64,000 bases of DNA from the IMG/VR virus record IMGVR_UViG_3300036715_000626, positions 62,001-126,000 of that record, one strand, 5' to 3'. The position numbers and the translations under genes were made by a program. This document shows positions 1,630-15,156 of the stretch, piece by piece. The stretch's first letter is position 1. Each line of letters begins with the position of its first letter. A model generated the notes under the pieces. It did not search any database and was not told the DNA's origin. It saw only the letters and a program-made list of their open reading frames with translations.

Positions 1630-3484
1630 TCTCTTATTCACATAATACGTTACTATTACGTCGCGGCTTTACCCGCTGCTCGATCTTTCGACCGATGACT
1701 GTGTTTTACACAGAAAACCCTCTTAAGGGTGAGTAGACTATATCTTATTTTTGATTGTTTTGTGTTCAAGTCTTCTGATCTTAATATGGGGGTGATCAGA
1801 AAGACTCACTAATTCTTCTAAACTGTGTCTAAGTAAGTACGAGTTTATGTTTGATCTTGGATTACCAGCATCTTTAAATACTCCTAAATACATAGCTAAT
1901 CTGAAGTTACCAAATACATAAAATACTTGTTTACCTTCTTCTCTATTACTATCAATGACTTCATATGTAGCAGCACTAATATCTACATTGTATCTACTGT
2001 TTACTACCTCTTCTTCAGTATAGTTTTTCCAAGTAAAGTCATTAACAGATGATTTTATACCATAGCCTTTAATTATCCAAGACTCATTGCATGTAGACGA
2101 TTTAGCTAATGCCGTACTAATCCTGTGATTATTTACTTGGTTGGATACCGGCTCTTTTGTTAACAAGAAATCAGATACTTCATCAATAGTGTTTAACACT
2201 ATTTCTTCTTTAAGTGTATAATCATACAGATAGTAAAAATGATCTCTCTTGATATATGGTTTAGACAACCATGTTTCTCTTGCTAATATAACTTCTTCTT
2301 TATTAACACTGTTGGGTATTTTAGTAACATCCATAGTTGGAGTAACTAGATAACCCATGGTGTATATATAACCATCTCGATTAAGAAACTTAGATAAATA
2401 TCCAATGGACATACCTGTATTATAAGATACCAACATCATACTGTTATACATAGTCCATGTCTCATCAAGTACATCATATACCCACATCTCCACAGCAGCT
2501 TTACCACTGGTATTAACAGGTCCTAAAACAAACTTATCCTTTAGAGATATAATATACCTATTTAGAATAGGATACTTATCAGAATGTTTTATATGCGATA
2601 CGATAGCTAATGGATTGACATTCAAATATTTAGACATTCTACTAATAGACATAAAAGTTTTTTCAGTATTATCCAGTATATCTTTAACAGTGACTATTGC
2701 ACTGTTCGTCCATAACCCGCTATCAACTGCGTGATTGGTATTCTCTTTACGAGTATTCCAAGCCAAATTCCAAATCCTATTATTTTGTTTATTTCCATCT
2801 TCATGATTAACAGTTGGTTTATTTTCTGGATTAGGTATCCATGCTAAAGCAACCATTCTGTGTACTTTTCTAGGGTTCCTAGCTAAGGTATCAGATGTTA
2901 ATGTGGCGTTAACATAACCATCCGGATCTAGGCTTGTTTTTAAAAGCCCTCCAGTAATAACCCGCAGTCTACCTATATTACTAGCTTCGTAACCTTTATA
3001 CCCGAGCACTGGTTTCCAGAGTTCATTTTTTAATTCCTCCTCTGTATAAGGAATGTGTTTACTTCGTATTACCACTATATTCCTTTTTTAACAAACAACA
3101 CCCCCGTATTATTTGTTCCTTTTATAAAACAATCAAAATCCTTCCGTTTCGATTTAAGGGATTTGATACCCACCCACTTGGGCCCTACTCTACTCCGTTG
3201 AGTACTTATTAGTACCGAGAGCGTCTATAGCTCTCTCATACACTGTCGTGCGTCGTTTCGATAGTCGTTGAGCACATCTCTTCATCTTACATGCTAAGAG
3301 ACTTCGCTGCGTCGATTCCCAAATCCTGATGAGTTTTTACCATTCCTTTATTTCCATTATTACGGTTAAGGTTGTTATACTCTGTTTCCAGGTATAAGTG
3401 GTATCATCAAGCTCTAACGGGGTCCCCGCAATTAGGAAGGTTATTTTACTACGCATCACTGCGTAGGGAGACAAATTATTCTTT
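1630..3484 (-). mobile_element. group I intron (phage IA2-like) in nvRNAP beta', with homing endonuclease in P8
   Basis: P1: exon GGAGAU pairs IGS GUCUCC with the conserved U.G; P element AAUUGCGGGGA; Q AAUCGACGCAGC; R CUCAACGACUAUC; S AAGAUAUAGUCU; several P9 hairpins before exon 2. Confidence 0.9.
1738..3075 (-). CDS. intron-encoded NUMOD4-HNH homing endonuclease
   Basis: WKPVLGYKGYEASNIGRLR (NUMOD4); VHRMVALAW...VNHEDGNKQNNRIWNLAWNT (HNH_3); its TAG stop lies inside the intron S element. Confidence 0.9.
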   Translation of the reverse strand: MVIRSKHIPYTEEELKNELWKPVLGYKGYEASNIGRLRVITGGLLKTSLDPDGYVNATLTSDTLARNPRKVHRMVALAWIPNPENKPTVNHEDGNKQNNRIWNLAWNTRKENTNHAVDSGLWTNSAIVTVKDILDNTEKTFMSISRMSKYLNVNPLAIVSHIKHSDKYPILNRYIISLKDKFVLGPVNTSGKAAVEMWVYDVLDETWTMYNSMMLVSYNTGMSIGYLSKFLNRDGYIYTMGYLVTPTMDVTKIPNSVNKEEVILARETWLSKPYIKRDHFYYLYDYTLKEEIVLNTIDEVSDFLLTKEPVSNQVNNHRISTALAKSSTCNESWIIKGYGIKSSVNDFTWKNYTEEEVVNSRYNVDISAATYEVIDSNREEGKQVFYVFGNFRLAMYLGVFKDAGNPRSNINSYLLRHSLEELVSLSDHPHIKIRRLEHKTIKNKI

Positions 3485-4732
3485 ATCTCCATCAAAGTCA
3501 GCATTGGACGACTTAGCGATGAGACCCGAGATACCAATAGTGTTATCATAGGTATCTGTTTTAAACTTACCTATATACACTGCTTGTGATGAACCTTGTA
3601 GTAGACTTGGATTCCGTTGTGCTAAGACCATAATCTTTCTGTCAGGCGCTTCGTTAATGAGTTCCTGTAACAGTTCATCGATAAGCGGTATGTACCGTTT
3701 AACCGCGTCAAACAGCATGTTACTTGCTTTCTTATACGTCATTTTACGTTGATTAACCAACTTGTTTATAAGATGAGGTCTAAACGCAGTTACTCCGATA
3801 GCCCAAGGTACCCATATCTCGTCATGACGATGTTTACCAGGGATACTTGTAATAACTGATCTGAAAGTAAAATGTGATCTTGCTCCGTATACATGCTTAC
3901 GAAATAATCCTACTTTCTTAGTAATATACCGTTCATAGTAGTTATGATACAATGAAGCTAATTTAGAAATAACTACCGATGTATGAGATGCATTTTTACG
4001 ATGGCTTTGTTTCTCACTTGTAGAGTTAATCTTAATCCACGTCATAACAACATCAATAACATCCGATACCGCTAAGTTAATAAATTTACCTTTAGTGGTA
4101 TTTTCCATAACGAAGAGTTTCTTATTGATAATCGGTAAATAGTTACTGAAGATGAGATCCTTTTGATGGGTATACATGTCCAATAACAAATACAAGTTAT
4201 CTTGTTTATCGATATCTTTAAACTTAGCATGGTTCATCAGATACTGAATGATTTCAGGGAGTTTGATAATAAAGTTCTTATAAGAACGTTCTACCATAAT
4301 CTCTTTGATACCATGAGTAAAGTTTTGGAGTTCCACCGGTGGGTTATACATTGGATCAGTCATCCATCGTACATAATCGATTTTCTTATCGAGAATGTTA
4401 CGTAGCATCAACCAGTAAGCTGGGTTGATAAATTCTAACCCATCTTCTAATTTTTCTAACCAAAGCATAGGATCTACTTTTTCATGCACTTCTTTACAGA
4501 CAGTACCGCATGAACTACATACTTTTTCAAGTAGATAGCGACCTTTAAGGTTACCACAATCACAGGAAGGAATAGTAGATAGTATATCACTGTCATAAAC
4601 AGTAATCAGTTGGTTGTTAACTTCTTCGATGTCATCTACTGAGAAATGATCTAGGTTGTTAACGATTACTTTAAACCCTGTGGAGTGTGCGAAGAATTCG
4701 TCGAAATTGACTAAACGTTGTGTGATAGCCAT
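3485..4732 (-). CDS. non-virion RNAP beta' subunit, exon 1 (phiKZ gp55-like)
   Basis: Zn ribbon CDC...CSSC; RNPSL; catalytic NADFDGD immediately before the intron. Confidence 0.9.
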
Positions 4733-5050: not shown

Positions 5051-5533
5051 CTATTCGATAATAAAATTATCTAATATCTCGGTAGACTTTAAAGCAGATC
5101 TCTGGACAGTTAAGTTAAACTTTACTTTAATATACTCTTTAGTATTAAGAATCATAATACGCATAAGCACGCATATGAAATCATAATCCGATGGTAAACC
5201 AGGTAACTCATCAACAATAGTGTCAGGAAAATTAAGGTATACTACCTTAACATTTTTATGCGTTACAGCATACTCTATCCTATTAAGAAGTTTTTCCATA
5301 GAAGAAACTTCCGTTAGGATTAGATTCTTATTATTTACCTCGTCAACTGTATAACCGTGTTTGACGAAATCGGTACCGAGTTTATCTAAACCAGACATAC
5401 ATTCAAAATATACTGATTCTTCATTAGTTTCACGTATATTTTGAATCGCATCTTTAACCATATCCATGTTTGTATTTACTTCATAGTCTTCTAACAGATA
5501 GACTGTTATATTGCTAAATTCGATTTTTTGCAT
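5051..5533 (-). CDS. hypothetical protein
   Basis: 160 aa ORF with AAAGGA RBS. Confidence 0.7.
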   Translation of the reverse strand: MQKIEFSNITVYLLEDYEVNTNMDMVKDAIQNIRETNEESVYFECMSGLDKLGTDFVKHGYTVDEVNNKNLILTEVSSMEKLLNRIEYAVTHKNVKVVYLNFPDTIVDELPGLPSDYDFICVLMRIMILNTKEYIKVKFNLTVQRSALKSTEILDNFIIE

Positions 5534-5561
5534 TTTTTATCCTTTTAATAATAAGTATTAA

Positions 5562-5765
5562 CTACTTAACTATATCATCATAGATCGCTCTGGCTACAGA
5601 GTGTACTACAATACCACACTTATTAACATCCAAAACACAGCTACCACGTTCTTTTTCTTTCGTACGTGATATGTTAATGTATGTTACTAAATTACTACTG
5701 CTACATGCCGGACATACTTTATAATGTCTAGGAACTAACGCCTGACAACTATTACACTTTTTCAT
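5562..5765 (-). CDS. small zinc-ribbon protein
   Basis: CNSC...CPAC motif; AGGTG RBS. Confidence 0.65.
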   Translation of the reverse strand: MKKCNSCQALVPRHYKVCPACSSSNLVTYINISRTKEKERGSCVLDVNKCGIVVHSVARAIYDDIVK

Positions 5766-5774
5766 TGCACCTAC

Positions 5775-6476
5775 TTACATAATATCGCTTAATGTCGATA
5801 ACGTAATTAGATTAACTAAAGAACCTAATTCACTATCGCTATAGCTTTCTAACTTACTCCAGAGTTCTTCCAACTCAACTTTGTAATGCTCTACATATTC
5901 AGTATCATTGGTTATATAGCCAGTTCTACTGTATTTAGCCTTAAGATGATCGATAATGTACTTGATTTTTTCACCATAGGCGTCTAAAGAATCTTTAATA
6001 TCGGTAGGAAATTTATTAGACTTAACCATGCGTGAAATGATTGCCTGCAAATCCGGTCTACCTTTATCAGCGATTCTCAGTATTTTACTGTAAATAGAAC
6101 TTGATGATGTAACACTACTAGCTCGGTGCTCACGAACAGCATTCTCTATAATACAGAGTTCATCACTATTAAACATCTTTAGATATTTATCAGAGATATT
6201 TTTAACATAATCACCAGCTAAATCATGATGTTCCTTACGATTTTCATAAACTTTGATATCGTGAAGATACGCACACATGAAAATAATATGGTAATCGATT
6301 GAAGGTGATTTTAGTTTACACGCTAGCATAGCCATATTTTTATAAACATCATCTGCGTGATCGATCTGATGACCTAGATCGTTATGTATATAAAAGGTAT
6401 GTCTATAGTACTCCCTGGCTTCTTTTTGCCATTGATTTCTAAAATACGCCTCTATGGGTATATTTCTATTGCTCAT
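5775..6476 (-). CDS. HD-domain phosphohydrolase
   Basis: H..DH, LHDI, HR, IAD motifs. Confidence 0.85.
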   Translation of the reverse strand: MSNRNIPIEAYFRNQWQKEAREYYRHTFYIHNDLGHQIDHADDVYKNMAMLACKLKSPSIDYHIIFMCAYLHDIKVYENRKEHHDLAGDYVKNISDKYLKMFNSDELCIIENAVREHRASSVTSSSSIYSKILRIADKGRPDLQAIISRMVKSNKFPTDIKDSLDAYGEKIKYIIDHLKAKYSRTGYITNDTEYVEHYKVELEELWSKLESYSDSELGSLVNLITLSTLSDIM

Positions 6477-6505
6477 GATTTTCCTTTAAGTCTTTAAGAT
6501 AAGAT

Positions 6506-6549
6506 ATGTCTATACCAGGATACCGATTACGGTATCCTGGTATAGACAT
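6506..6549. terminator. long palindromic terminator closing the non-coding locus
   Basis: 20-bp inverted repeat ATGTCTATACCAGGATACCG / CGGTATCCTGGTATAGACAT. Confidence 0.7.
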
Positions 6550-6563
6550 CAGTAAAAAATATT

Positions 6564-6940
6564 CAAATCCCGGAGTGCGCCCGAGATTTGGTTTAAAAAG
6601 GGGCAGCATATTTTTTATTATACTCTCCGTAAGACTTAACTATCGGAGAGTCCAGAGTTTCTTTTATCGCTAAGTATATCTCAACTACAGCGGTGAATAC
6701 ATCTGAATTGTTTTCTAATTGAAGCGTCCAACAATTAGAAACACTTAAACAGTTTAAATATCCGTGAGTTATCGAACGCGTAAGGCGTAAACCCGATACC
6801 GATACTACATCGCGATGAGGTAGCCTGACCAACCGCGAAATACCGGCAACGAATACTTAAATAAACTGTTTAAATGGGGTCTATCACGCGCCGTTTAACG
6901 CCGGCCAATAAGCCGGCTGATCGGCACGTATAGAACACCA
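6564..6940 (-). ncRNA. candidate large structured ncRNA
   Basis: GC-enriched; nested helices with many G.U pairs on the minus strand; no credible RBS-led ORF. Confidence 0.55.
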
Positions 6941-7049
6941 GTCAATGTTAATATAACACTCAATGGTATTCTTATGTTATCCACTCGACTAATACTTATT
7001 GTACCGTCAAGCTTTTCGAATATGATGCATTTCATTTCTAACTGATAAC

Positions 7050-7123
7050 TGGTTAGACTAGACAGATTCAAACTGTCGACCTCTGTAGGGTGATACAGTG
7101 CTCTATCGCTGAGCTATAGCCTT
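7050..7123 (-). tRNA. tRNA-like RNA with CCA end and a non-canonical 6-nt anticodon loop
   Basis: AAGGCTA/TAGTCTA acceptor, GCTC/GAGC D stem, CTGTA-TCACCC-TACAG, GACAG-TTTGAAT-CTGTC, ACCA end. Confidence 0.75.
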
Positions 7124-7223
7124 GTATGTTGTCATACAGGCTTGCAATTCCTACATTGTCAGATTTTTGTCTGTGGGCCTGTATAACTGGTGTCATTACT
7201 GACATAAAAAAGTTGCCTGTGCG

Positions 7224-7314
7224 TGGTGGGTGCGGTAGGATTCGAACCTACGACGTTTCTTTAAATGTGGTCGATTATGAGTCGACAGGGCTCGACCGCT
7301 GCCCGTACACACCC
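7224..7314 (-). tRNA. tRNA with CAT anticodon (elongator Met or Ile2), long variable region
   Basis: GGGTGTG/CGCACCC acceptor, GTCGA-CTCATAA-TCGAC, GTAGG-TTCGAAT-CCTAC, encoded ACCA. Confidence 0.85.
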
Positions 7315-7699
7315 AGTATAAATACTTCCTGTGATAATTTGCAACTTATTCACAGGTTGTACTGGTAGGATATGAGCTGCATGTACTACCATTCATGCAG
7401 ATGAGCTGGTCCAGTTGACCCGATATAAAAAGATAGTTTGCTCAACACGTATCTTAACTTAAGTACACTCGATTATTGTCACAGCTCTAAGCAGTAACTC
7501 ACACAGTGCGTACAAAACATCTTACTCAAGGATGCTTCGGGTGACGTATATGTTGTTGAATACCAAAATGCTAGCTGGCGTTACGCCTAGGCTTTTCGCT
7601 ACGGTAATACGGACTATAACGAGTCCGTAACAAAAACATACATTTATCGCCACCACTCAATGCTAATAAAGCACTCAATGGTAACCACAATCTAATATT

Positions 7700-7708
7700 A
7701 TAATATAG
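7700..7708 (-). promoter_or_regulatory. putative early promoter of the non-coding/tRNA operon
   Basis: CTATATTAT motif. Confidence 0.6.
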
Positions 7709-7896
7709 GGGTAAAATAAACTCGAACTTATACGCAACAATAACCTACGACGAAACACATTAGTTATTGTGCATATAAGAGTGTCAACCGTGTACGTATA
7801 ACACCTATCAGTATTAAAGTTAATATTCATAGGTAGTATATTATGGTCATAATAATCTATTCTGATAAAAAATTATTGCATCACCATTACTCATAT

Positions 7897-7917
7897 TGAG
7901 AGGGAACATCCCTCTCA
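7897..7917. terminator. terminator after chimallin
   Basis: TGAGAGGGA-ACA-TCCCTCTCA. Confidence 0.55.
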
Positions 7918-7923
7918 GATCGT

Positions 7924-9786
7924 TTAATAACGACCGAAACCCATATTAGAGTATCCGGTACCGAAGTTCGGCCCAGCGCTAATATTTTGACGAGCAAACC
8001 CAGAGGCATTTGTAATACCAGTGTTTTGATAGTGTTGTCCAACAAGACCGATATTGGTGTTTTCTGTAAACACGATTTCTGGTTCGTAACGAACATCAAG
8101 ACCGGCTGCTGTTGCTGCGTTTGCAAGAGTTGTGATAAAGTCAGCTGTGAATGTAACACGGATAGCTTTACCAGCGATTTCTGCATCAGGCATGATGCGA
8201 GATATGACATCTACACGATTGATAAATGGATCAGATCCACCATTCAAATCACGTGGAAGTGATGAGTAGACATATTTGTTCATAACCGCGGTATCACCAT
8301 TTTTAGCGCATACGAATGCCAAGTCGACATCACGGATATCGCGCTCACCAGATTTATCAGCCCAAACACCAGTAGGTACAACAACACCAGAAGTAGCGAA
8401 GATGTTACCGATTGGGAAATCTGATGGGAAGTTACCATCTGTCAACCAGTTAGCTGCTGCGATAAGCTCTTTAGCCGCTGCTGTTTTGTTTTCGTTGTTA
8501 CCCGGTTGGGCCGCCTGTGAGAATATCGAAAGATATGATGTTTGTGGTCCGAATGACGGAATATCCAAAGATACTACCGGCGCAAGACTGAACATTTGAC
8601 CAATGATCCCGTAGATTTCATCTGTGGTATTTTTCTTACTTGTAAGATCAAGTACCGCGCCGATACCATTAGGATTACCTTCAAGGTTGGTGATCATGTT
8701 CAATACACCTGGGGTACGATCGTTACGTGGAGTAAGAGCTGCCATCCACATATTCTTTTGAGTCATAACCATACCGGCGATCAAACCAAGAAGTGCGAAA
8801 CCTGTTGTAGGCATAGCCACCGCATCACTTGTAATCACAATATGTGGTTTAAGACGTAGTTGTGATACCATAGGCATACCTGGAACTTGCGTTTGAACAT
8901 TGTCAGGAATAGCATCGATATAACCAGAAACCGCAGCAAGTGTTTGACGACCAGTGTCAGCGTTCAACGAATGGAATTGTTGTTGTGTGTTAACACGTAA
9001 CAATTCGATACGCCAGTCTGTACGTACTGGGCGACCTGATTCATCACGAGATACAGGGTTACCCATATTTGACTCTATTTTAAGCATTGATTCACCAGAA
9101 CGACCGACCGCTTCACGGATATTCAAATCACGGGTTGTGCCGCTCGTAAGAGCTGCTTCTACGTTCAACGCGTTGAATGCAATTGGCGCGATACGACGCG
9201 CAAGCGTCGCAACATCTTCATGTGTAGCATGTACGACAAGACCGTCAACGGTGACAAATTCAGTATTTTCACCGTACTCTTTAGAAAGTGCAGATACGAT
9301 GATACGCATCAATTCAGAATCGATTGCGTCGTCAGTTGTGAAGATAAATGGACGAGTATTTGTTTTAATCGCTTGGTTAACTTCATTTGTGATTTCGATC
9401 GCTTTCATAGGACGGCGACCAGTGTCCTCGAGAAGTAACGTATAGTAGTTAACTACGCCGCCGTCCGATTTAGAAATCACGATAGTGCTGTACGCAATAC
9501 CAGTAAAAATTTCTTTGTCAATAACCGTCACACGAGGACGTTGTGCGGTTAGAATTGGTTTGAACGTTTCCAACAATGCGTTACCGATGTTCATAGTATA
9601 TTCTGAACCTTGGTTAGTGGACATTGTGTAAATGTCACGACCGCCAAAACCTATTCCCATAGGGGTTTGCATTTTAGCACCCATATTTGATTTAAGATCT
9701 GCAACTGCTGCGGCTGTTTGCGTAGCTCCTACTGAAGCACCTGCGTTTGGTTTTTGATTGTTGTTAGCATCTGAGTTTACACCCAT
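7924..9786 (-). CDS. chmA: phage nuclear shell protein chimallin (phiKZ gp54-like)
   Basis: 620 aa; flexible N- and C-terminal tails; G.PVR.D motif; lies upstream of nvRNAP beta' as in Chimalliviridae. Confidence 0.8.
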   Translation of the reverse strand: MGVNSDANNNQKPNAGASVGATQTAAAVADLKSNMGAKMQTPMGIGFGGRDIYTMSTNQGSEYTMNIGNALLETFKPILTAQRPRVTVIDKEIFTGIAYSTIVISKSDGGVVNYYTLLLEDTGRRPMKAIEITNEVNQAIKTNTRPFIFTTDDAIDSELMRIIVSALSKEYGENTEFVTVDGLVVHATHEDVATLARRIAPIAFNALNVEAALTSGTTRDLNIREAVGRSGESMLKIESNMGNPVSRDESGRPVRTDWRIELLRVNTQQQFHSLNADTGRQTLAAVSGYIDAIPDNVQTQVPGMPMVSQLRLKPHIVITSDAVAMPTTGFALLGLIAGMVMTQKNMWMAALTPRNDRTPGVLNMITNLEGNPNGIGAVLDLTSKKNTTDEIYGIIGQMFSLAPVVSLDIPSFGPQTSYLSIFSQAAQPGNNENKTAAAKELIAAANWLTDGNFPSDFPIGNIFATSGVVVPTGVWADKSGERDIRDVDLAFVCAKNGDTAVMNKYVYSSLPRDLNGGSDPFINRVDVISRIMPDAEIAGKAIRVTFTADFITTLANAATAAGLDVRYEPEIVFTENTNIGLVGQHYQNTGITNASGFARQNISAGPNFGTGYSNMGFGRY

Positions 9787-10009
9787 AATATCTCCTTGGA
9801 TAGTTTGTCGACAAACTACGATTTGTTTGTATAAGTATAACTTACACTATCTAAATGATATGTGGTTATTTTTTATTCTAAAAACATATTAATTAGATAT
9901 TTCGGTCACAGCGGGTTGTGTATCTACACCATTAGATGTAGTTTACTTTTATCATATATATAGTTATATGTTTAAAAAAATATTTTATTGATTACTTAAA
10001 GGAAATTAC

Positions 10010-11104
10010 ATGTTTAGTTACTTTCTAAATAATAACATAGACACTACTGAATATGTTGTTAAAGAATACTCACGGTTTGAATATTTCCAACGTCGGTACC
10101 GTCACGAACTTGATAAAGTAGTAAACTATTATAAATTAAGAGAACGTACTGTTAACAATAGACACATACTGAGCAGATTAGTCAATATGATAGCTCCTAA
10201 TATAAATCTCGATGATGTTACTTATTTAAAGATAGTAACCGCTACTGCTAAATACGTTAGTAAACAATTTGGTATTACCAGTACTATCAACTATGGAATA
10301 GCTCATGAGAGTATATTTTATGGGCAAAATTCAACAGAGTTACTTATATACACAGAGACAAGTATAGACTTAGCATATGTTGCTAAAAACTATGATGCTA
10401 TAGCTAGTGTAAAACCTATCTATCATGAAGATACCGATTTAGACTATTATGTACCTATGGGTACTAAGGATTTACGTAAACCATCTTTATCTGTTTTTGA
10501 AATAGATATCGTTATGATGCTGATGCAATATAAATACTGGGCTCTTGACAGAATCTATTCAGACCTCGGAACTAACCCCAATGTATTTGTAGCGACTGTC
10601 GTTATTCCTAATATGGTTTACCAAACATTTGATTTAGCCTTATGGAACAGATTTGTAGCTATTCACCGAACGGATTATATTCCTAAGTTTGTTATTAAAC
10701 ACCCATTCCCACTTATAAACTTCGATGATAAAGCGGATAATATCTACCGCGACATCTTAAAATATGTTAGTAATAATATAATACCTCTCAGAGGTCTTTT
10801 AGAGACTATTCCAGCTGCTTATTCTGTTAACATGGATAATGTACTTGCAATAGATATAAATTACTATACTGCTCAATCTGAATGGGTTATATGGTTATCC
10901 CGTATCTTTGTAATAAACGATCTTATTGATATCCTTGGTGAAAAAGGTCGTATTAGAAATGTTCTTTTAATAAATGAGCTTCCTGTTAAAATGCGTTTAT
11001 TAGATAACCGAAGTACTAGACTTGAAGGTATGTTACCTGAAGTTATTTACAATAGATATATCGATACTATCAATTCTATTAAAGAAAAAGTAGGAAAAAG
11101 ATAA
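10010..11104 (+). CDS. conserved phiKZ-like protein next to chimallin
   Basis: 364 aa, AAAGGA RBS, divergent from chmA. Confidence 0.75.
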   Translation: MFSYFLNNNIDTTEYVVKEYSRFEYFQRRYRHELDKVVNYYKLRERTVNNRHILSRLVNMIAPNINLDDVTYLKIVTATAKYVSKQFGITSTINYGIAHESIFYGQNSTELLIYTETSIDLAYVAKNYDAIASVKPIYHEDTDLDYYVPMGTKDLRKPSLSVFEIDIVMMLMQYKYWALDRIYSDLGTNPNVFVATVVIPNMVYQTFDLALWNRFVAIHRTDYIPKFVIKHPFPLINFDDKADNIYRDILKYVSNNIIPLRGLLETIPAAYSVNMDNVLAIDINYYTAQSEWVIWLSRIFVINDLIDILGEKGRIRNVLLINELPVKMRLLDNRSTRLEGMLPEVIYNRYIDTINSIKEKVGKR

Positions 11105-11109
11105 GAAAA

Positions 11110-11180
11110 AAATAGGCTGGATTCGAACCAGCGACCGATAGCCCTTGCGGGCTATAACTCTACCACTGAGCTACTATATA
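11110..11180 (-). ncRNA. anticodon-less tRNA-like small RNA
   Basis: TAGCTCAGTGGTAGAG D arm; ATAGCCC-GCAA-GGGCTAT in place of the anticodon arm; GCTGG-TTCGAAT-CCAGC T arm; weak acceptor, no CCA, ends in a T-run. Confidence 0.7.
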
Positions 11181-11183
11181 ATA

Positions 11184-11192
11184 ATAATATAG
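11184..11192 (-). promoter_or_regulatory. putative early promoter driving the tRNA-like RNA
   Basis: CTATATTAT with upstream TTATAACC and A/T tract like the other copies. Confidence 0.65.
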
Positions 11193-11221
11193 GGTTATAA
11201 ATAAATCAAAATAAAAAGGTT

Positions 11222-11252
11222 AAGATAGCACTACCATTGGTAGTGCTATCTT
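11222..11252. terminator. palindromic terminator
   Basis: 15-bp arms, 1-nt centre, directly after the stop of 11253..11555. Confidence 0.7.
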
Positions 11253-11555
11253 TTAATCTTCATATCCGGAACCGCCACATACATCGCATGTTTTTTCGCA
11301 ACGTCGGTTATCGTCATCGTAAATATCATCATCTACAACACCGGTGCCGCCACATCCATCACATTTATTTTTCTCTTCGTAAGCCATAGTACCCTCCTTT
11401 AAAGAATCTGCTTCTTGACAAATTTGTTTATACGAATTCCGTACTAAAGTCATATACCCGCTACCACCACAATTACTGCATGTTTCTGTAACATTATTGC
11501 TCTTAACATATCCTGTGTGGTTACACGTCGGACACCCAACACTAACACTACCCAT
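11253..11555 (-). CDS. DnaJ-type cysteine-rich zinc-finger protein
   Basis: Four CxxCxGxG-like repeats. Confidence 0.75.
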   Translation of the reverse strand: MGSVSVGCPTCNHTGYVKSNNVTETCSNCGGSGYMTLVRNSYKQICQEADSLKEGTMAYEEKNKCDGCGGTGVVDDDIYDDDNRRCEKTCDVCGGSGYED

Positions 11556-11581
11556 ATAAACTCCTTTGTCATTACAACTTA

Positions 11582-11590
11582 ATAATATAT
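11582..11590 (-). promoter_or_regulatory. putative early promoter
   Basis: ATATATTAT upstream of 11555. Confidence 0.55.
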
Positions 11591-11592
11591 AA

Positions 11593-11778
11593 TTATTCCC
11601 ATGCGGAAATAATCTTTTTATTAGGTACTAAAGTTAATATCCACCCGGTACCTATACACGTAGGACAGATACGTGTAACGATACCATGCTCGGCCTCAAA
11701 CTCTTCTGGGAGTTGTCCTGTGCCAAAACATTCTTTACAATATTCTTTACTCTCTGTAAACCCTTCAATCGTGCACAT
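11593..11778 (-). CDS. small DnaJ-type zinc-finger protein
   Basis: CKECFGTG and CPTCIGTG. Confidence 0.7.
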   Translation of the reverse strand: MCTIEGFTESKEYCKECFGTGQLPEEFEAEHGIVTRICPTCIGTGWILTLVPNKKIISAWE

Positions 11779-11786
11779 AAATTCTC

Positions 11787-14237
11787 CTATATCGTTGTTA
11801 ACTTCATATTGGCATTTACACTTTTCACATCTCCGTACATACTAGGATCCCCTAAGATATTAATATCGCTATTAGTAAATCTTCCATACATACTTTCAAA
11901 ATGCGATACCATGAATATCTGTTTAAAGTGTCCTGCGAAAATTGATTCTATTATATCGTATGCCTTAACTCGATGATGTTTATCAAAAGTTCTAGCAAAC
12001 TCATCCAATATAAGCGGTGCGTCGATTATCTTAGAGTATTTAATAAATACTATTTTAAAAGCTAAATCCACTATCTCCTGCATAGAACTAGATAGTTTAC
12101 TAACATCTTCTATTACTTCACTTCCATCTACTCTAACTGGAAATTTATAATCCAAATCACTACCTTCTGAAATAGTCGAAGGTAATATCTCTATATCGTA
12201 AGACCATACTTTAGATATAATGTTATTCATATCCCGAATATAGTTATTTAAAAAACTATTAATACTTTTAGCGATAATGCCTTCAGAAGGAGATAACTCT
12301 TTTACCAACAACTTAAGAACCTTTTCTTTGGTGGTAAGTATTTCTATTTCATTAGTATCGTTAGTTATCTTGTTAACATACGTATTGTTAGATGCTATGC
12401 GTTGTTCTATTTCAGCCATTTGTTGTTTAAGTTGTGAAACAAGGTCTGTAATATACTTATTACGTACTTGATCCACTGTTACTCCGATACCACGATTAAT
12501 ATTCTTTAGAGTAGTTCGTAACTCAAAATGAGCTTTCTCTATTTTAGTTAGATCTGATATTAGTTTATTATAACCTATAATTTCTTGTTGTTTAGAATAG
12601 ACTATTTTAATATAAGAACTTAGATTTGTTTCTAGTTCTTCTATATTCTTAAGATTATTTTCTTTTATTATCTTGTTAATGGTTTTGATATTTTCAAGAT
12701 CTTTTTCTAACATCTTAAGTTGCTTACTCTTTTCGGCGATACTACACCATTCTTCTAAACGGTTCTTAACCATATTGAGTTTATTAACAACTGAAGCTGA
12801 ACTTTCTTTAAGATTAGTCTCAGTAAGGATATACGTCCATATAGGACGTACTAGAGGAATAGAAAGACTGTAGGTATGTAATTCCTTAACTAACTCTTTG
12901 TATTCGTTATAAGTAGTCAATACGAGACTGTTACTATCGATATAGGTTCTTAACTTATCAAGTTCTACTTTAAGTATATCTTTATCTCTTAGAAGTATCT
13001 TTTGATTATCTTGGTCAAAATGATGATACCAAGAATTACCACATTGTTTACACGATACTTTATTTTCATCAGTTTTGTGTTTTTCAATATGTTCTAACTC
13101 TTTAACAATAAGATTATAACGAGTTTCTTTAGCTTTGTATTCTTTACTAGCTATATCTACCGAACTCATAAGTTTTACCATCTCAGAATTATCTTTATTT
13201 ATGTTCTTATATTCGTCAAGTCTCGCTAGCACACCTATGACTTCAAAATATGTATCGTTTATAACGCTATATATATTTTCTACGTTATCAAGAGTTACGC
13301 CATCTATAGTTAGCTTACTTTCGGATATTAATTTTGTTATGTTTAATATCTCGTGTGTTAGCTCTTCTTCGGATTTAAGAGCTTTACTATCAAAGCTACT
13401 TAGTTTATCCTTAATAGCAGTAATACTGGAATTATAAAAGATAATTTCATTTTCTAATATACTTATTTTACTTTTTATATCATTTACATTAACCGTTAAT
13501 AACCCAACATTAGAACTGTATATTTTGGTTATCTCTCTATTAGCAATGTTTAACTTATCGTACATACTATCTAAGTCTACCGCTCTGTCTACATCGTGCT
13601 TGTAGAGCGAGATAAGATATTCTACATAATTAGATAACATGACCAGATTTGTTTTATAACGTTCTAGTTCTTTATCTTCAATAACAGTAGATTTTATCTT
13701 TAAGATATTCTCTTGTAATATTTTAATACCACCAACGATATCTCTGTGCCTCTGCCGTAATTCATTATATACTCGTAAAGGATATGTGTAGTCGATGTTA
13801 GATATATCGCTAAAGACTTTTTTACGTTCTACCGCCGGCATTGAGGTAAATTTAGTATTTCCTAATAAGATACTGTGTATGTAACCAGTAACTTGAAAAT
13901 GTTCTTTAACCAATTCAATCTGAACTGATTTAGTACCACCTTGATTTAACTCTGTGTTATTAAATAAAAAACTATGTTTATTACCTAACTCACCACCAGA
14001 ACTTAATATATAATAACTGTTGTTATGTTCTATTTCGATTATCTTGTACCCACCTTCGTTAAACTCGCGTTTAAGATCAGGTGGGACTGGTGTTAACATG
14101 TATAGTAGACTACTCTTACCTTGACCGTTACCACCAAGTATCAATTGTATATTTTGTTCTGGAGTATATTCTAACGTTTCAATATTGGATAAAAATAATC
14201 GTTTGTATCTAAATAAAATTAATTTCTTAATTACCAC
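11787..14237 (-). CDS. SbcC/Rad50-like SMC ATPase
   Basis: Walker A GGNGQGKSS; coiled coil with CKQC hook; LSSSMQE signature; LILDE Walker B. Confidence 0.9.
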   Translation of the reverse strand: MVIKKLILFRYKRLFLSNIETLEYTPEQNIQLILGGNGQGKSSLLYMLTPVPPDLKREFNEGGYKIIEIEHNNSYYILSSGGELGNKHSFLFNNTELNQGGTKSVQIELVKEHFQVTGYIHSILLGNTKFTSMPAVERKKVFSDISNIDYTYPLRVYNELRQRHRDIVGGIKILQENILKIKSTVIEDKELERYKTNLVMLSNYVEYLISLYKHDVDRAVDLDSMYDKLNIANREITKIYSSNVGLLTVNVNDIKSKISILENEIIFYNSSITAIKDKLSSFDSKALKSEEELTHEILNITKLISESKLTIDGVTLDNVENIYSVINDTYFEVIGVLARLDEYKNINKDNSEMVKLMSSVDIASKEYKAKETRYNLIVKELEHIEKHKTDENKVSCKQCGNSWYHHFDQDNQKILLRDKDILKVELDKLRTYIDSNSLVLTTYNEYKELVKELHTYSLSIPLVRPIWTYILTETNLKESSASVVNKLNMVKNRLEEWCSIAEKSKQLKMLEKDLENIKTINKIIKENNLKNIEELETNLSSYIKIVYSKQQEIIGYNKLISDLTKIEKAHFELRTTLKNINRGIGVTVDQVRNKYITDLVSQLKQQMAEIEQRIASNNTYVNKITNDTNEIEILTTKEKVLKLLVKELSPSEGIIAKSINSFLNNYIRDMNNIISKVWSYDIEILPSTISEGSDLDYKFPVRVDGSEVIEDVSKLSSSMQEIVDLAFKIVFIKYSKIIDAPLILDEFARTFDKHHRVKAYDIIESIFAGHFKQIFMVSHFESMYGRFTNSDINILGDPSMYGDVKSVNANMKLTTI

Positions 14238-14302
14238 AATATCTCCTTATAGTTCTTACTTAATTTGGTCTTTTATAAAAACTATTTAAGAAAAAAATAC
14301 CT

Positions 14303-14332
14303 AGTTAGTAACGGGATATCCCGTTACTAACT
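14303..14332. terminator. palindromic terminator
   Basis: AGTTAGTAACGGGA-TA-TCCCGTTACTAACT. Confidence 0.7.
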
Positions 14333-15156
14333 TAGTCTTGTTTATCCGTGTTATGGTCGATAACTCTTTTGTAAGTTTCGCTAAGCCATGTTTCAGCATC
14401 AGCTAAAGATAATACCACGTCATCATTAAGATCACTTACGTAGTTGAACATGACAACATTATCTTCAATTACTGTATCAAGGTCGTACATGTTCCAATTT
14501 TTAATATAGGTACCTTCTTTATAGCCATTTGCACTACGTACTAGGTTAAGTGCGTTTTTACCAATATACAGATTTACCATATCGTTAAAACTAAACGAAT
14601 AGTACGTCTCTAACAGGTACTGGATATAATATATGATTTCCAAGTTTTCAGGTAACCTCATAAGACTGTCGGATAACAGTTGGAGTAAATTATCCACATT
14701 ATCAGAATTGGTTCGATGCGTTTCGGTAATAGTATTAAGATCGTCTTTATGAAGTTCTAAAAACTCTTCATATGTATAGACTTCTTCAATACGCGCAATT
14801 GCTGCCGTAATCAACGCCGCGTTATCGTACTCTACTTGTTGATCCTCAGGAAGTTCTGAATTGATTTTCAAAATATCTTTCGCCAACGAAGCCAGCATCA
14901 AACTGATAACAAAATGCCATAAATCAACATACTCGATTTTAAAGTTGTTGATATCCGAAACCATGTCGATGTCTTTCCAATGTTTCCATGGAAAACAATC
15001 CAACATTTCAGATGCTTCCATACTGATACACGTCACCCAGTTAATTTCTTTACCCTTATTGGTAACTCCTGTGATCCATTCATCTCCACTGGTAGCTGTG
15101 TTTAAACTTGCTTGTAACTCTGCAAGTGAAATCAATATCTCTTTTTGTTTTGTCAT
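14332..15156 (-). CDS. dimeric (all-alpha) dUTPase
   Basis: E..E...FPWKHWK; IEYVDLWHF; Y..KNALN..R..NGYKEGTY.K.W; EDN motifs. Confidence 0.85.
   Translation of the reverse strand: MTKQKEILISLAELQASLNTATSGDEWITGVTNKGKEINWVTCISMEASEMLDCFPWKHWKDIDMVSDINNFKIEYVDLWHFVISLMLASLAKDILKINSELPEDQQVEYDNAALITAAIARIEEVYTYEEFLELHKDDLNTITETHRTNSDNVDNLLQLLSDSLMRLPENLEIIYYIQYLLETYYSFSFNDMVNLYIGKNALNLVRSANGYKEGTYIKNWNMYDLDTVIEDNVVMFNYVSDLNDDVVLSLADAETWLSETYKRVIDHNTDKQD

What the first reader, a model, noticed from the sequence alone, without database searches (positions are those of the whole stretch)
6506..7708. A 1.2-kb protein-free early operon between chimallin and nvRNAP
Seen: early promoter (7700), structured leader, CAU tRNA, tRNA-like RNA, large structured RNA, then a 20-bp terminator (6506). 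There is no credible protein gene. Known: chmA and nvRNAP beta' are normally close neighbours in the core block. Inference: a polycistronic RNA processed by host RNase P/E into several functional RNAs, i.e. an RNA-based accessory system.
Basis: partly seen in the sequence, partly recalled or inferred. Interest (0 to 1): 0.6.

Follow-up and report, generated by a model that had tools for sequence, protein, structure and literature searches.

The report
Non-coding tRNA island beside chimallin
The 1.45-kb gene-free stretch after the nuclear-shell gene of an uncultured jumbo phage looks like a self-contained non-coding transcription unit holding the phage's only plausible tRNA, a structurally preserved tRNA look-alike that probably no longer reads codons, and conserved RNA hairpins of unknown role.

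Summary
Window 6477-7923 (minus strand) is the largest ORF-free stretch of a 205-kb chimallivirus genome. It starts with a promoter motif that recurs across the genome and shares its core with the experimentally mapped early (virion RNA polymerase) promoter of phage AR9. It contains a CAU tRNA and a tRNA-like RNA with a 6-nt anticodon loop. It ends in an intrinsic terminator followed by a 20-bp hairpin.

No ORF in it is conserved or matches any family. Against the closest relative (chimallin 61% identical, four-fold sites 45%), three blocks stay 60-83% identical and change by compensatory substitutions:
- the promoter plus a 5' hairpin motif;
- a hairpin with an invariant loop;
- the tRNA-like RNA plus a 75-nt 3' element and a second copy of the hairpin motif.

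The CAU tRNA itself and the 'large structured RNA' are not conserved in sequence, though the counterpart region in the relative is equally structured.

All tRNA-family genes of this genome (3) and of a 222-kb relative (7) lie beside chimallin, and most have no usable anticodon loop.

Best reading: an early tRNA-operon-like unit processed into a tRNA and several stable RNAs, as in the T4 tRNA cluster. No RNA data exist, so transcription, processing and function are inferred.

The parts
7898..7916 (-). Hairpin (8 bp, 3-nt loop) just after the chimallin stop codon; likely the chimallin terminator, upstream boundary of the island
   Evidence: Read. The arms differ from L003 but stay complementary in the alignment.
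7692..7725 (-). Promoter: T-rich tract, ACCCC, TATATTAT (7707-7700), six bases, then A7693/G7692 as the predicted start
   Evidence: recurrent genome-wide motif, enriched about 7-fold in intergenic DNA and correctly oriented 25-110 nt before ORFs. Conserved in L003. Same core and start spacing as the AR9 early consensus AAATATATATTAT-(6N)-G (PMC5312081).
7652..7682 (-). 5' hairpin motif, copy 1 (12 bp with two conserved mismatch positions), about 10 nt after the predicted start; followed by GGCGA
   Evidence: five copies in three genomes (window x2, L003 x2, L005), 88% of cells paired, 3 pairs with changes on both sides. Model R1 finds no other convincing copy in 219 kb.
7514..7546 (-). Conserved CGUCACCC (7546-7539) plus an 8-bp hairpin (7538-7514) with the invariant 9-nt loop CUUGAGUA(A/U). 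CGUCACC can alternatively pair with GGUGGCG at 7654-7648.
   Evidence: 8 of 8 pairs kept in both genomes, 3 with changes on both sides, loop unchanged. The long-range pairing appears in the L003 minimum-energy fold.
7224..7314 (-). tRNA with anticodon CAU (Met or Ile2), 7-nt loop CUCAUAA, encoded CCA, one extra base before the D stem, 17-nt variable region
   Evidence: Shares the acceptor top GGGU/ACCC, discriminator A and CCA with the CAU tRNAs found after chimallin in L003, L007, L027 and L029.
7050..7123 (-). tRNA-like RNA derived from tRNA-Val: full cloverleaf, encoded CCA, 6-nt anticodon loop UCACCC
   Evidence: Orthologue of the L003 tRNA-Val(UAC). 22 pairs are 97.7% kept, with 5 changes on both sides, including the tertiary pair 19:56 (A:U against G:C). 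Contigs of two other samples show no indel at the loop.
6976..7049 (-). Conserved 3' element directly after the CCA: outer helix GUUAUC/GAUAAC enclosing a 12-bp hairpin and a 32-nt conserved single-stranded stretch
   Evidence: 70-83% identity against 45% at four-fold sites; 18 of 18 pairs kept in both; 1 double and 3 single compensatory changes. The same fold is predicted for both genomes.
6937..6967 (-). Hairpin motif, copy 2
   Evidence: 55.8 bits with R1.
6600..6936 (-). Lineage-specific run of stable hairpins, including a 135-nt hairpin at 6876-6742 whose tip (6765-6810) varies between strains
   Evidence: z = -7.7 for 7052-6550. The L003 counterpart has z = -8.7. Sequence identity to L003 is at background. 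The strain variant of the tip folds equally well, -49.8 against -50.6 kcal/mol.
6554..6590 (-). Intrinsic-terminator-like site: 11-bp stem with 5 G-C pairs, 5-nt loop, then AATATTTTTT
6506..6549 (-). 20-bp perfect hairpin with a 4-nt loop and no U-tract, 30 nt before the start codon of the HD-hydrolase gene; a back-up terminator or 5'/3' end protector
   Evidence: Unchanged in the strain variant of run X1.
11108..11191 (-). Outside the given span but of the same kind: a stand-alone tRNA-like gene whose anticodon arm is a 7-bp stem capped by a GCAA tetraloop. It has its own TATATTAT promoter (11191-11184) and a T-run right after the T arm.
   Evidence: (46.5 bits).

Best explanation
Window 7725-6506 (minus strand) is an autonomous, protein-free transcription unit of a deep-branching chimallivirus. 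It works like a phage tRNA operon that also yields non-tRNA stable RNAs.

Inferred mechanism:
1. The injected virion RNA polymerase starts at about 7693/7692, a fixed distance downstream of the TATATTAT promoter element, and reads about 1.1 kb to the terminator at 6590-6554. The 20-bp hairpin at 6549-6506 acts as a second barrier.
2. The two cloverleaves are recognised by host RNase P at their 5' sides (7314 and 7123). Their 3' sides are trimmed back to the encoded CCA by host RNase E or exonucleases.
3. This would release a 5' leader RNA of about 380 nt, the CAU tRNA, a 100-nt spacer, the Val-derived tRNA-like RNA and a 3' RNA of about 460-490 nt.

The CAU tRNA is the only product likely to decode. 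It probably reads AUA as a lysidine-modified Ile2 tRNA, or AUG; AUA is 32% of this phage's Ile codons.

The Val-derived RNA has probably lost decoding. It has a 6-nt loop and anticodon CAC, which would read a codon the phage rarely uses. Its L-shape is nevertheless kept by selection. It most likely serves as a processing handle that defines the 5' end of the conserved 3' RNA, or as a non-decoding tRNA mimic.

The repeated hairpin motif with conserved mismatches, at the start of the leader and again inside the 3' RNA, is most likely a protein-binding or end-protecting module.

Shown: sequence features, absence of conserved ORFs, conservation, compensatory changes, recurrence of the promoter motif, clustering of all tRNA-like genes beside chimallin. 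Inferred: transcription, timing, processing, and every function.
For: - Non-coding: no conserved or family-matching ORF, and it is the largest ORF-free stretch of the genome.
- Promoter: TATATTAT-(6N)-AG is enriched about 7-fold in intergenic DNA. It stands 25-110 nt before about 20 ORFs, including the nvRNAP beta'-like gene, a dUTPase and small unknown genes, none of the tested ones structural. It is conserved in L003. Its core and start spacing match the mapped AR9 early promoter, and that paper states that vRNAP promoters of phiKZ-related phages are extended AT-rich elements with a start 6 nt downstream (PMC5312081).
- tRNA and tRNA-like.
- Selection on RNA: blocks of 60-83% identity against 45% at four-fold degenerate chimallin sites. 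Compensatory changes occur in the tRNA-like RNA (5 of 22 pairs, including tertiary 19:56), the loop hairpin (3 of 8), the 3' element and the hairpin motif.
- Strain comparison: in a strain variant from another sample the island carries at most about 0.6% substitutions outside one hypervariable hairpin tip, against 2-6% in the HD gene and chimallin.
- Clade level: a CAU tRNA follows chimallin in L003, L007, L027 and L029. All 3 tRNA-family hits of this genome and all 7 of the 222-kb relative lie next to chimallin.
- Codon use: ATA is 32% of Ile codons and GTG only 10% of Val codons.
- Termination.
- Precedent: the T4 RNAs RNAC and RNAD of unknown function (PMC9697503). That they lie in the T4 tRNA cluster and are processed with it is from my own knowledge.
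Against: - No RNA-seq run holds this phage, so no transcript, 5' end, 3' end or processing site has been observed.
- Only one alignable relative exists (L003/L004), so covariation rests on 2-5 sequences and the shuffle controls are weak.
- The CAU tRNA and the large 3' hairpins are not conserved in sequence with L003. The CAU tRNA lies at a different position than in L003.
- The low strain-level divergence could reflect a recent sweep or a mixed assembly rather than selection, because the 3' end of chimallin on the same contig is also nearly unchanged.
- The promoter class is assigned by analogy only. Chimallin itself, an early gene in phiKZ-like phages, has no exact TATATTAT within 220 nt upstream.
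- The HD gene has no clear promoter of its own, so read-through, meaning the island acts as a long leader, is not excluded.
Confidence: 0.58

Rival explanations
1. An ordinary phage tRNA locus. Only the CAU tRNA matters, the second cloverleaf is a decaying tRNA-Val pseudogene, and the rest is spacer that folds because it is G+C-richer than the genome.
For: The CAU tRNA is the one element found after chimallin across the clade. The 6-nt loop and the U34-to-C change look like loss of function. The large hairpins are not conserved in sequence.
Against: The supposed pseudogene and its 3' flank are the best-conserved part of the island (70-83%). All helix differences from L003 are compensatory, including a tertiary pair. 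The 6-nt loop is the same in contigs of two other samples. The hairpin motif recurs in three genomes. The non-tRNA hairpins show compensatory changes.
Confidence: 0.17
2. The tRNA-like RNAs are anti-defence decoys. They would be early-made tRNA mimics without a cleavable or readable anticodon loop that occupy or inhibit host tRNA-targeting nucleases or other tRNA-binding factors, and the island would be an RNA-based counter-defence locus.
For: Non-decoding cloverleaves recur in this clade. Examples are the window's 6-nt loop and its GCAA-capped arm, the L007 arms capped by UACC and CAAA, and the long-arm forms in L005, L007 and L030. They carry an early-type promoter, in one case a private one. 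Phage tRNAs are known to neutralise PARIS and retron effectors, and anticodon-loop changes are proposed to evade nucleases (PMC11464382 and PMC11555353).
Against: The known cases work by supplying a functional, uncleavable tRNA, which an anticodon-less mimic cannot do. No defence target is known and the host is unknown. Nothing here tests binding.
Confidence: 0.12
3. The island is the long structured 5' leader of the downstream HD-hydrolase operon (5775-6476 and following), acting as a cis-regulatory RNA with embedded tRNAs, rather than a separate unit.
For: The HD gene starts 30 nt after the 20-bp hairpin and has only a 7-of-8 match to the promoter octamer. The 20-bp hairpin lacks a U-tract.
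Against: A good intrinsic terminator precedes the hairpin. L003, L005 and L007 keep the island but not the HD gene. L003 has an exact TATATTAT just before its first downstream gene.
Confidence: 0.06
4. A DNA-level element, such as a replication origin, a packaging site or operator sites for a DNA-binding protein; the 'hairpin motif' would be two direct repeats of CATTGAGTG about 20 bp apart.
For: The motif can be read as direct repeats just downstream of a promoter. The perfect 20-bp palindrome is unusual.
Against: There is no GC-skew inflection at the island. Changes between copies keep the two arms complementary rather than keeping the repeats identical. The tRNA genes and CCA ends show the region is read as RNA on one strand.
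Confidence: 0.04
5. The gap hides small protein genes (39-80 aa ORFs).
For: Six ORFs of 39-80 aa can be drawn. One relative has a called 49-aa ORF with a ribosome-binding-like site in its island (L007 9551-9700).
Against: There are no family matches. The start codon is lost, stops are present, and 1-, 2- and 9-nt indels occur in the best-conserved block against L003. Differences between the two hairpin-motif copies would all be non-synonymous.
Confidence: 0.03

Closest known systems
Bacteriophage T4 tRNA gene cluster with the stable RNAs RNAC and RNAD
   Same: A phage transcription unit without proteins that carries tRNAs together with other small stable RNAs of unknown function (RNAC and RNAD 'of yet unknown functions', PMC9697503). 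Co-location and processing by host RNase P are from my own knowledge.
   Different: T4 has eight decoding tRNAs, and RNAC and RNAD are classed as late. Here there is one plausible decoder, an early-type promoter, a tRNA mimic with a 6-nt loop, and a fixed position beside chimallin. There is no sequence or Rfam similarity.
tRNA-like processing handles: plant mitochondrial t-elements, MALAT1/mascRNA, gammaherpesvirus 68 tRNA-miRNA units
   Same: A non-decoding cloverleaf placed directly next to another RNA so that tRNA-processing enzymes define that RNA's end (t-elements: PMC1920247; the other two from my own knowledge). Here the tRNA-like RNA and the element that begins right after its CCA are conserved together.
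   Different: Those are eukaryotic or organellar systems. No cleavage has been observed here. An encoded CCA argues for 3' trimming rather than an RNase Z cut.
Phage tRNAs that counter tRNA-targeting defences (T5 tRNA-Lys against PARIS; tRNA-Tyr against retron Eco7; anticodon-loop variants in mycobacteriophages)
   Same: tRNA genes carried by a lytic phage, with departures in the anticodon loop (PMC11464382, PMC11555353).
   Different: The known examples remain functional decoders with 7-nt loops. The RNAs here have 4- or 6-nt loops or long arms and cannot replace a cleaved tRNA.
Early (virion RNA polymerase) promoters of AR9 and phiKZ-like jumbo phages
   Same: An extended AT-rich element with the core TATATTAT and a start a fixed 6-7 nt downstream, present in tens of copies per genome (PMC5312081).
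   Different: The consensus here has a C-rich AACCA/ACCCC box just upstream. Timing and polymerase are untested. AR9 is not a chimallin phage.

Membership tests
tRNA (Rfam RF00005), element 7314-7224 | Cloverleaf scoring above the family's gathering score | tested here: met
   49.3 bits against 29. ARAGORN calls tRNA-Met(cat). The cloverleaf is the minimum-energy fold.
tRNA (Rfam RF00005), element 7314-7224 | 7-nt anticodon loop with U33 and a purine at 37 | tested here: met
   The loop is CUCAUAA.
tRNA (Rfam RF00005), element 7314-7224 | Class I geometry: two bases between the acceptor and D stems, 4-5-nt variable loop | tested here: not met
   There is one inserted base before the D stem and a 17-nt variable region with at most a 3-bp stem.
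tRNA (Rfam RF00005), element 7314-7224 | Aminoacylation and decoding | not testable with these tools
   This needs charged-tRNA sequencing or in-vitro charging. Met and Ile2 identity cannot be told apart from sequence here.
tRNA (Rfam RF00005), element 7123-7050 | Cloverleaf scoring above the family's gathering score | tested here: met
   43.7 bits against 29. 22 pairs are kept against the L003 tRNA-Val, with 5 changes on both sides.
tRNA (Rfam RF00005), element 7123-7050 | 7-nt anticodon loop presenting a three-base anticodon | tested here: not met
   The loop is the 6-nt UCACCC, and ARAGORN reports a two-base anticodon. The L003 orthologue has the 7-nt loop UUUACCC. Independent contigs show no indel. 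I therefore file it as tRNA-like, not as a tRNA.
tRNA (Rfam RF00005), element 7123-7050 | Elbow contact G19:C56 and an encoded or added CCA end | tested here: inconclusive
   The pair is A19:U56 here and G19:C56 in L003. This is a compensated change that suggests the contact is kept, but G18-G19 is not canonical. CCA is encoded.
Jumbo-phage early (vRNAP) promoter | Extended AT-rich consensus repeated across the genome, with the start a fixed few bases downstream | tested here: met
   TATATTAT-(6N)-AG: 32 of 67 copies are intergenic and about 20 are correctly placed before ORFs. Compared with AR9's AAATATATATTAT-(6N)-G.
Jumbo-phage early (vRNAP) promoter | Activity early in infection and independent of new protein synthesis | not testable with these tools
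   There are no RNA runs. Indirect support: the motif precedes the nvRNAP beta'-like gene, which must be made before the nvRNAP exists.
Intrinsic terminator | G+C-rich stem-loop followed at once by a U-tract | tested here: met
6590-6564 plus AATATTTTTT.
Known large or structured bacterial and phage RNAs in Rfam (tmRNA, RNase P RNA, 6S, GOLLD, ROOL, OLE, riboswitches, group I/II introns and others) | Match to a curated covariance model | tested here: not met
   Permissive cmscan of 5500-12000 at E up to 1 gave only the three tRNA hits and chance-level rows. The same was true for the relatives' islands.
T4-type tRNA operon with co-processed stable RNAs | One transcript carrying tRNAs and non-tRNA stable RNAs, matured by RNase P and other host RNases | not testable with these tools
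   One promoter motif and one terminator region bracket all elements. No transcript data exist.
Protein-coding gene | A conserved open frame, or similarity to any protein family | tested here: not met

The most novel reading that the evidence does not exclude
A deep-branching chimallivirus clade keeps a dedicated early-expressed RNA locus next to its nuclear-shell gene. The main products would not be decoding tRNAs but a family of anticodon-less tRNA mimics (6-nt loops, tetraloop-capped arms, long arms) and partner RNAs marked by a shared hairpin motif. They would act in the first minutes of infection, for instance by occupying host tRNA-targeting nucleases or tRNA-processing enzymes, or by serving as handles for sorting RNA between compartments. 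This would be a previously undescribed RNA-based take-over or counter-defence module of nucleus-forming phages.
Probability: 0.2. Interest if true: 0.78.

Novelty: new variant of a known kind. Interest (0 to 1): 0.55.

Why it matters
Nucleus-forming jumbo phages are studied almost entirely through their proteins, and their non-coding RNAs are barely charted. A 2026 review says only that phiKZ expresses non-coding RNAs with potential regulatory roles (PMC13282480).

Here all tRNA-family genes of two large genomes sit in one island beside the most characteristic gene of the family. Most of them cannot decode, yet they are kept in shape by compensatory evolution.

If the RNAs are made early and are stable, they give a defined, small and testable set of candidates for RNA-level host take-over or counter-defence in a lineage with no cultured member. 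They would also be a clear bacterial-virus example of a tRNA fold kept for something other than translation.

If only the CAU tRNA accumulates, the locus is an ordinary phage tRNA gene with unusually structured flanks.

Tried and rejected
- Nucleotide search of the island against 50,697 phage records found no match. The nearest cultured chimallins are only 24-27% identical.
- A single-protein search of IMG/VR with chimallin found nothing. The alignment-based search gave only L039 (no island) and L040, which is the same record as L007.
- Exact-pattern scans with three conserved island motifs in IMG/VR and a 19-mer in the metagenome contigs returned 0, 7, 7 and 8 loci. None shares anything else with the island, so they are chance matches. 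The single metagenome scan is thereby spent and did not even recover L003.
- The covariance model of the hairpin motif found no further convincing copy in 219 kb. One weak hit lies at 7796-7838 (21.5 bits, E about 0.02).
- Sequencing runs: only three DNA runs hold the phage (microbial mat, sediment) and none is RNA. Laid contigs gave strain variants but cannot show transcripts.
- A sigma-70-like site at 7344-7315 ends 1 nt before the tRNA. The scan as a whole is not above shuffles (19 found against 16 expected). Rejected as a promoter.
- I looked for phage enzymes that could repair or splice tRNA-like RNAs (RtcB, RNA ligase, CCA-adding/poly(A) polymerase family). There were none in this genome or in the 222-kb relative.
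- The HD hydrolase next door is YedJ-like and of unknown function, with no link to tRNA shown.
- The ARAGORN 'intron' calls for long-arm tRNA-likes in relatives give inconsistent anticodons (His, Asn, Ile, Asp). I do not take them as real introns.
Its contigs, which would give a third alignable island, could not be fetched.
Full report
**Context.** The window is bases 62,001-126,000 of a 205,015-bp IMG/VR virus record with direct terminal repeats. The 620-aa ORF at 7924-9786 (minus strand) matches the Pfam chimallin family. The gene at 3476-4732 carries an RNA polymerase Rpb1 domain 2 (E 4e-5, 24.3 bits, just under Pfam's 25.3 cut-off), as expected for a non-virion RNA polymerase beta' fragment. 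The gene at 5775-6476 is an HD hydrolase. The phage has no close cultured relative: the best chimallin matches in 50,697 phage records are 24-27% identical. The DNA occurs in microbial-mat and sediment metagenomes.

**The observation.**
- a TATATTAT element at 7707-7700;
- a CAU tRNA at 7314-7224 (49.3 bits);
- a second cloverleaf at 7123-7050 (43.7 bits) with a 6-nt anticodon loop;
- a very stable fold of 7052-6550 (z = -7.7);
- a classical terminator at 6590-6554;
- a perfect 20-bp hairpin at 6549-6506.

The ORFs of 39-80 aa that can be drawn in the gap match no Pfam or PHROG family. The gene-free span is 6477-7923 (1,447 nt). Once those ORFs are set aside it is three times longer than any other gap in the genome. 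It is also G+C-richer than the neighbouring small genes.

**The promoter.** The octamer TATATTAT occurs 67 times in the genome. 32 copies are intergenic, although only about 7% of the genome is intergenic. About 20 copies lie 25-110 nt upstream of an ORF on the same strand, usually as T-rich tract, AACCA, TATATTAT, six bases, AG, followed 20-30 nt later by a ribosome-binding site. The genes behind it include the nvRNAP beta'-like gene, a dUTPase, a small DnaJ-type zinc-finger protein and small unknown proteins. None of the seven tested is structural.

The mapped early promoters of phage AR9 have the consensus AAATATATATTAT-(6N)-G(+1). That paper states that vRNAP promoters of phiKZ-related phages are extended AT-rich elements with the start 6 nt downstream (PMC5312081). 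The assignment 'early, virion polymerase' is therefore reasonable but rests on analogy. The predicted start is A7693 or G7692.

**Relatives.** A word-based protein search found 32 related chimallins at 33-61% identity. I fetched the genomic context for twelve of them.

- Seven have a gene-poor stretch right after chimallin:

| Locus | Size of stretch | tRNA-family content |
|---|---|---|
| L003/L004 | 1.3 kb | tRNA-Met(CAU), tRNA-Val(UAC) |
| L005 | 1.3 kb | tRNA-like RNAs with long anticodon arms |
| L007 | 2.3 kb | seven tRNA-family hits |
| L026 | 0.85 kb | none found |
| L027 | contig ends after 0.6 kb | Met(CAU), Leu(UAA) |
| L029 | 0.33 kb | Met(CAU) |
| L030 | 0.28 kb | a long-arm tRNA-like RNA |

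- Five (L006, L008-L011) have no such stretch. In four of them chimallin is followed directly by a 375-419-aa gene; in L010 a TnpB-type gene comes first. In L009 the nvRNAP beta'-like gene comes next after that.

On a quick chimallin tree the island-bearing genomes fall in several lineages and the island-less ones in three others. That tree is unrooted and the search was not completed.

**Where the tRNA-family genes lie.** The whole 205-kb genome has only three tRNA-family matches, all within 4 kb of chimallin. The 222-kb relative has seven, all within 1.5 kb directly after chimallin. In both genomes only one, the CAU tRNA, has a normal anticodon loop.

**What is conserved.** Only L003/L004 can be aligned with the window outside the tRNAs. 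Chimallin is 60.6% identical at the protein level, and four-fold degenerate sites are 45% identical, which I use as the neutral level. Against that background:
- 7723-7650 (promoter and first hairpin) is 60-72% identical.
- 7545-7515 is 65% identical.
- 7136-6960 (tRNA-like RNA, the element after it, second hairpin) is 70-83% identical.
- The rest is at 30-45%. This includes the window's CAU tRNA and the hairpins between 6936 and 6600.

The best-conserved block contains 1-, 2- and 9-nt indels and loses the only possible start codon in L003, so it is not coding.

**Structures.**
- *tRNA-like RNA.* It is the orthologue of the L003 tRNA-Val(UAC). All 22 cloverleaf and tertiary pairs but one are kept, with five changes on both sides: three in the T stem, one in the acceptor stem, and the tertiary pair 19:56 as A:U against G:C. 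Its anticodon loop has lost one base and reads UCACCC. The three-base reading CAC would pair with GUG, which is only 10% of this phage's Val codons, while GUA is 39%. Contigs from two other samples cover the loop without an indel, so the 6-nt loop is not an assembly error. The RNA has apparently given up decoding but not its shape.
- *3' element.* Directly after the CCA lies a 75-nt element: a GUUAUC/GAUAAC helix around a 12-bp hairpin. All 18 pairs are kept in both genomes, and the same fold is predicted independently for each.
- *Loop hairpin.* The hairpin at 7538-7514 keeps 8 of 8 pairs, three with changes on both sides, around an unchanged loop CUUGAGUA.
- *Hairpin motif.* A 31-nt motif of the form ACCAYURAGU...AUUKAVUGGU occurs twice in the window (7682-7652 and 6967-6937), twice in L003 and once in L005. 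It has 12 pairs, 88% of cells paired, two positions that are mismatched in most copies, and three pairs with changes on both sides. A model built from it finds no other convincing copy in 219 kb.

With two to five sequences these counts are consistent with RNA structure but have little statistical power.

**Strain-level data.** Contigs of run X1 represent a variant strain. They show about 32 substitutions in the HD gene (5.8%) and 2-4% in chimallin. There are none in 6504-6764, a cluster of about 11 changes confined to 6765-6810 (the tip of the 135-nt hairpin), and at most 7 in the remaining 900 or so nt of the island. Small indels occur in the promoter-to-hairpin spacer. The variant tip, which X2 shares, folds as well as the window's. 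This fits purifying selection with one free loop. A recent sweep or a mixed assembly cannot be excluded.

**The other tRNA-like RNAs.** At 11180-11108 there is a cloverleaf (46.5 bits) whose anticodon arm is a 7-bp stem closed by a GCAA tetraloop. It has its own TATATTAT promoter at 11191-11184, and the predicted start falls inside the 5' acceptor strand. A T-run follows the T arm. L007 has two cloverleaves with arms capped by UACC and CAAA, and three with arms extended by 30-35 nt. L005 and L030 have homologous long-arm forms. Neither large genome encodes RtcB, an RNA ligase or a CCA-adding enzyme detectable by Pfam models. I therefore do not read the long arms as introns.

**Interpretation.** The most economical reading is a tRNA-operon-like early transcription unit. 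Host RNase P and 3' trimming would cut it into a CAU tRNA, a tRNA mimic and flanking stable RNAs.
- The CAU tRNA is useful to a 35% G+C phage in which AUA is 32% of Ile codons.
- The joint conservation of the tRNA mimic and the element that starts right after its CCA suggests the cloverleaf is kept as a processing handle. This is the principle of plant mitochondrial t-elements (PMC1920247) and, from my own knowledge, of mascRNA and the gammaherpesvirus tRNA-miRNA units.
- The nearest phage precedent is the T4 tRNA cluster with RNAC and RNAD, whose functions are still unknown (PMC9697503).
- A decoy role against tRNA-targeting defences is attractive given recent work (PMC11464382, PMC11555353), but the known cases use functional tRNAs.

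None of the steps after DNA sequence has been observed. No RNA run holds this phage.

**Rivals** are listed with their evidence in the Rival explanations section. In brief:
- The pseudogene-and-spacer reading is contradicted by the pattern of conservation.
- The long-leader reading is weakened by the terminator and by the lack of the HD gene in relatives.
- The DNA-element reading is weakened by arm-complementary changes and the absence of a skew inflection.
- The hidden-ORF reading is contradicted by frame-breaking differences.

**Verdict.** The locus is a new variant of a known kind (phage tRNA cluster with accompanying stable RNAs). Its unusual traits are the fixed position beside chimallin, the early-type promoter and the predominance of non-decoding tRNA mimics.

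Noticed in passing
window 3177-3494 (-), with ORF 1738-3075 (-): A group I intron-like match (32.2 bits, E 2e-5, below Rfam's cut-off of 50) starts within the last bases of the nvRNAP beta'-like ORF (3476-4732). It is followed by a NUMOD4/HNH endonuclease ORF. This suggests the polymerase gene is interrupted by a mobile intron. L003 has a similar match (46.6 bits) at 14255-14593.
   Followed up: partly
window 11108-11191 (-): A stand-alone tRNA-like gene with a GCAA-tetraloop-capped anticodon arm, a private TATATTAT promoter and a T-run. It is absent at the equivalent place in L003.
   Followed up: partly
L007 10190-10396 (+): Two tandem tRNA-like units with long anticodon arms share one acceptor stem: 5' half before the first, 3' half after the second. 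This looks like an internal duplication of D arm, long arm and T arm.
   Followed up: no
L010 9100-10269 (+): In one island-less relative the slot directly after chimallin holds an IS605 OrfB/TnpB (Cas12f-like) gene. The site seems to be a hot spot for insertions.
   Followed up: no
window 17092 and 61482 (-); genome 53355 and 175223 (-): Four promoter regions share a much longer near-identical stretch of about 30 nt, TTCCAATATTTTATAGTTC before TATATTATAA. They form a distinct sub-class of the promoter motif.
   Followed up: no
window 6765-6810: About 11 substitutions and indels between strains are packed into 45 nt at the tip of a 135-nt hairpin, while the surrounding 500 nt are unchanged. 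Runs X1 and X2 share the same variant.
   Followed up: partly
window 7692-7713 and 7879-7890: The strain variant in run X1 has small deletions (2, 4 and 2 nt) around the predicted start site and insertions after the chimallin terminator. The TATATTAT octamer itself is untouched.
   Followed up: no
window 7796-7838 (-): A weak third match to the hairpin-motif model (21.5 bits, E about 0.02) lies between the chimallin terminator and the island's promoter.
   Followed up: no
window 10010-11104 (+) and equivalents in L003, L005-L009, L011, L026, L030: A 362-365-aa protein without any Pfam or NCBIfam match is encoded divergently just upstream of chimallin in nearly all relatives. It is a conserved, uncharacterised neighbour.
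   Followed up: no
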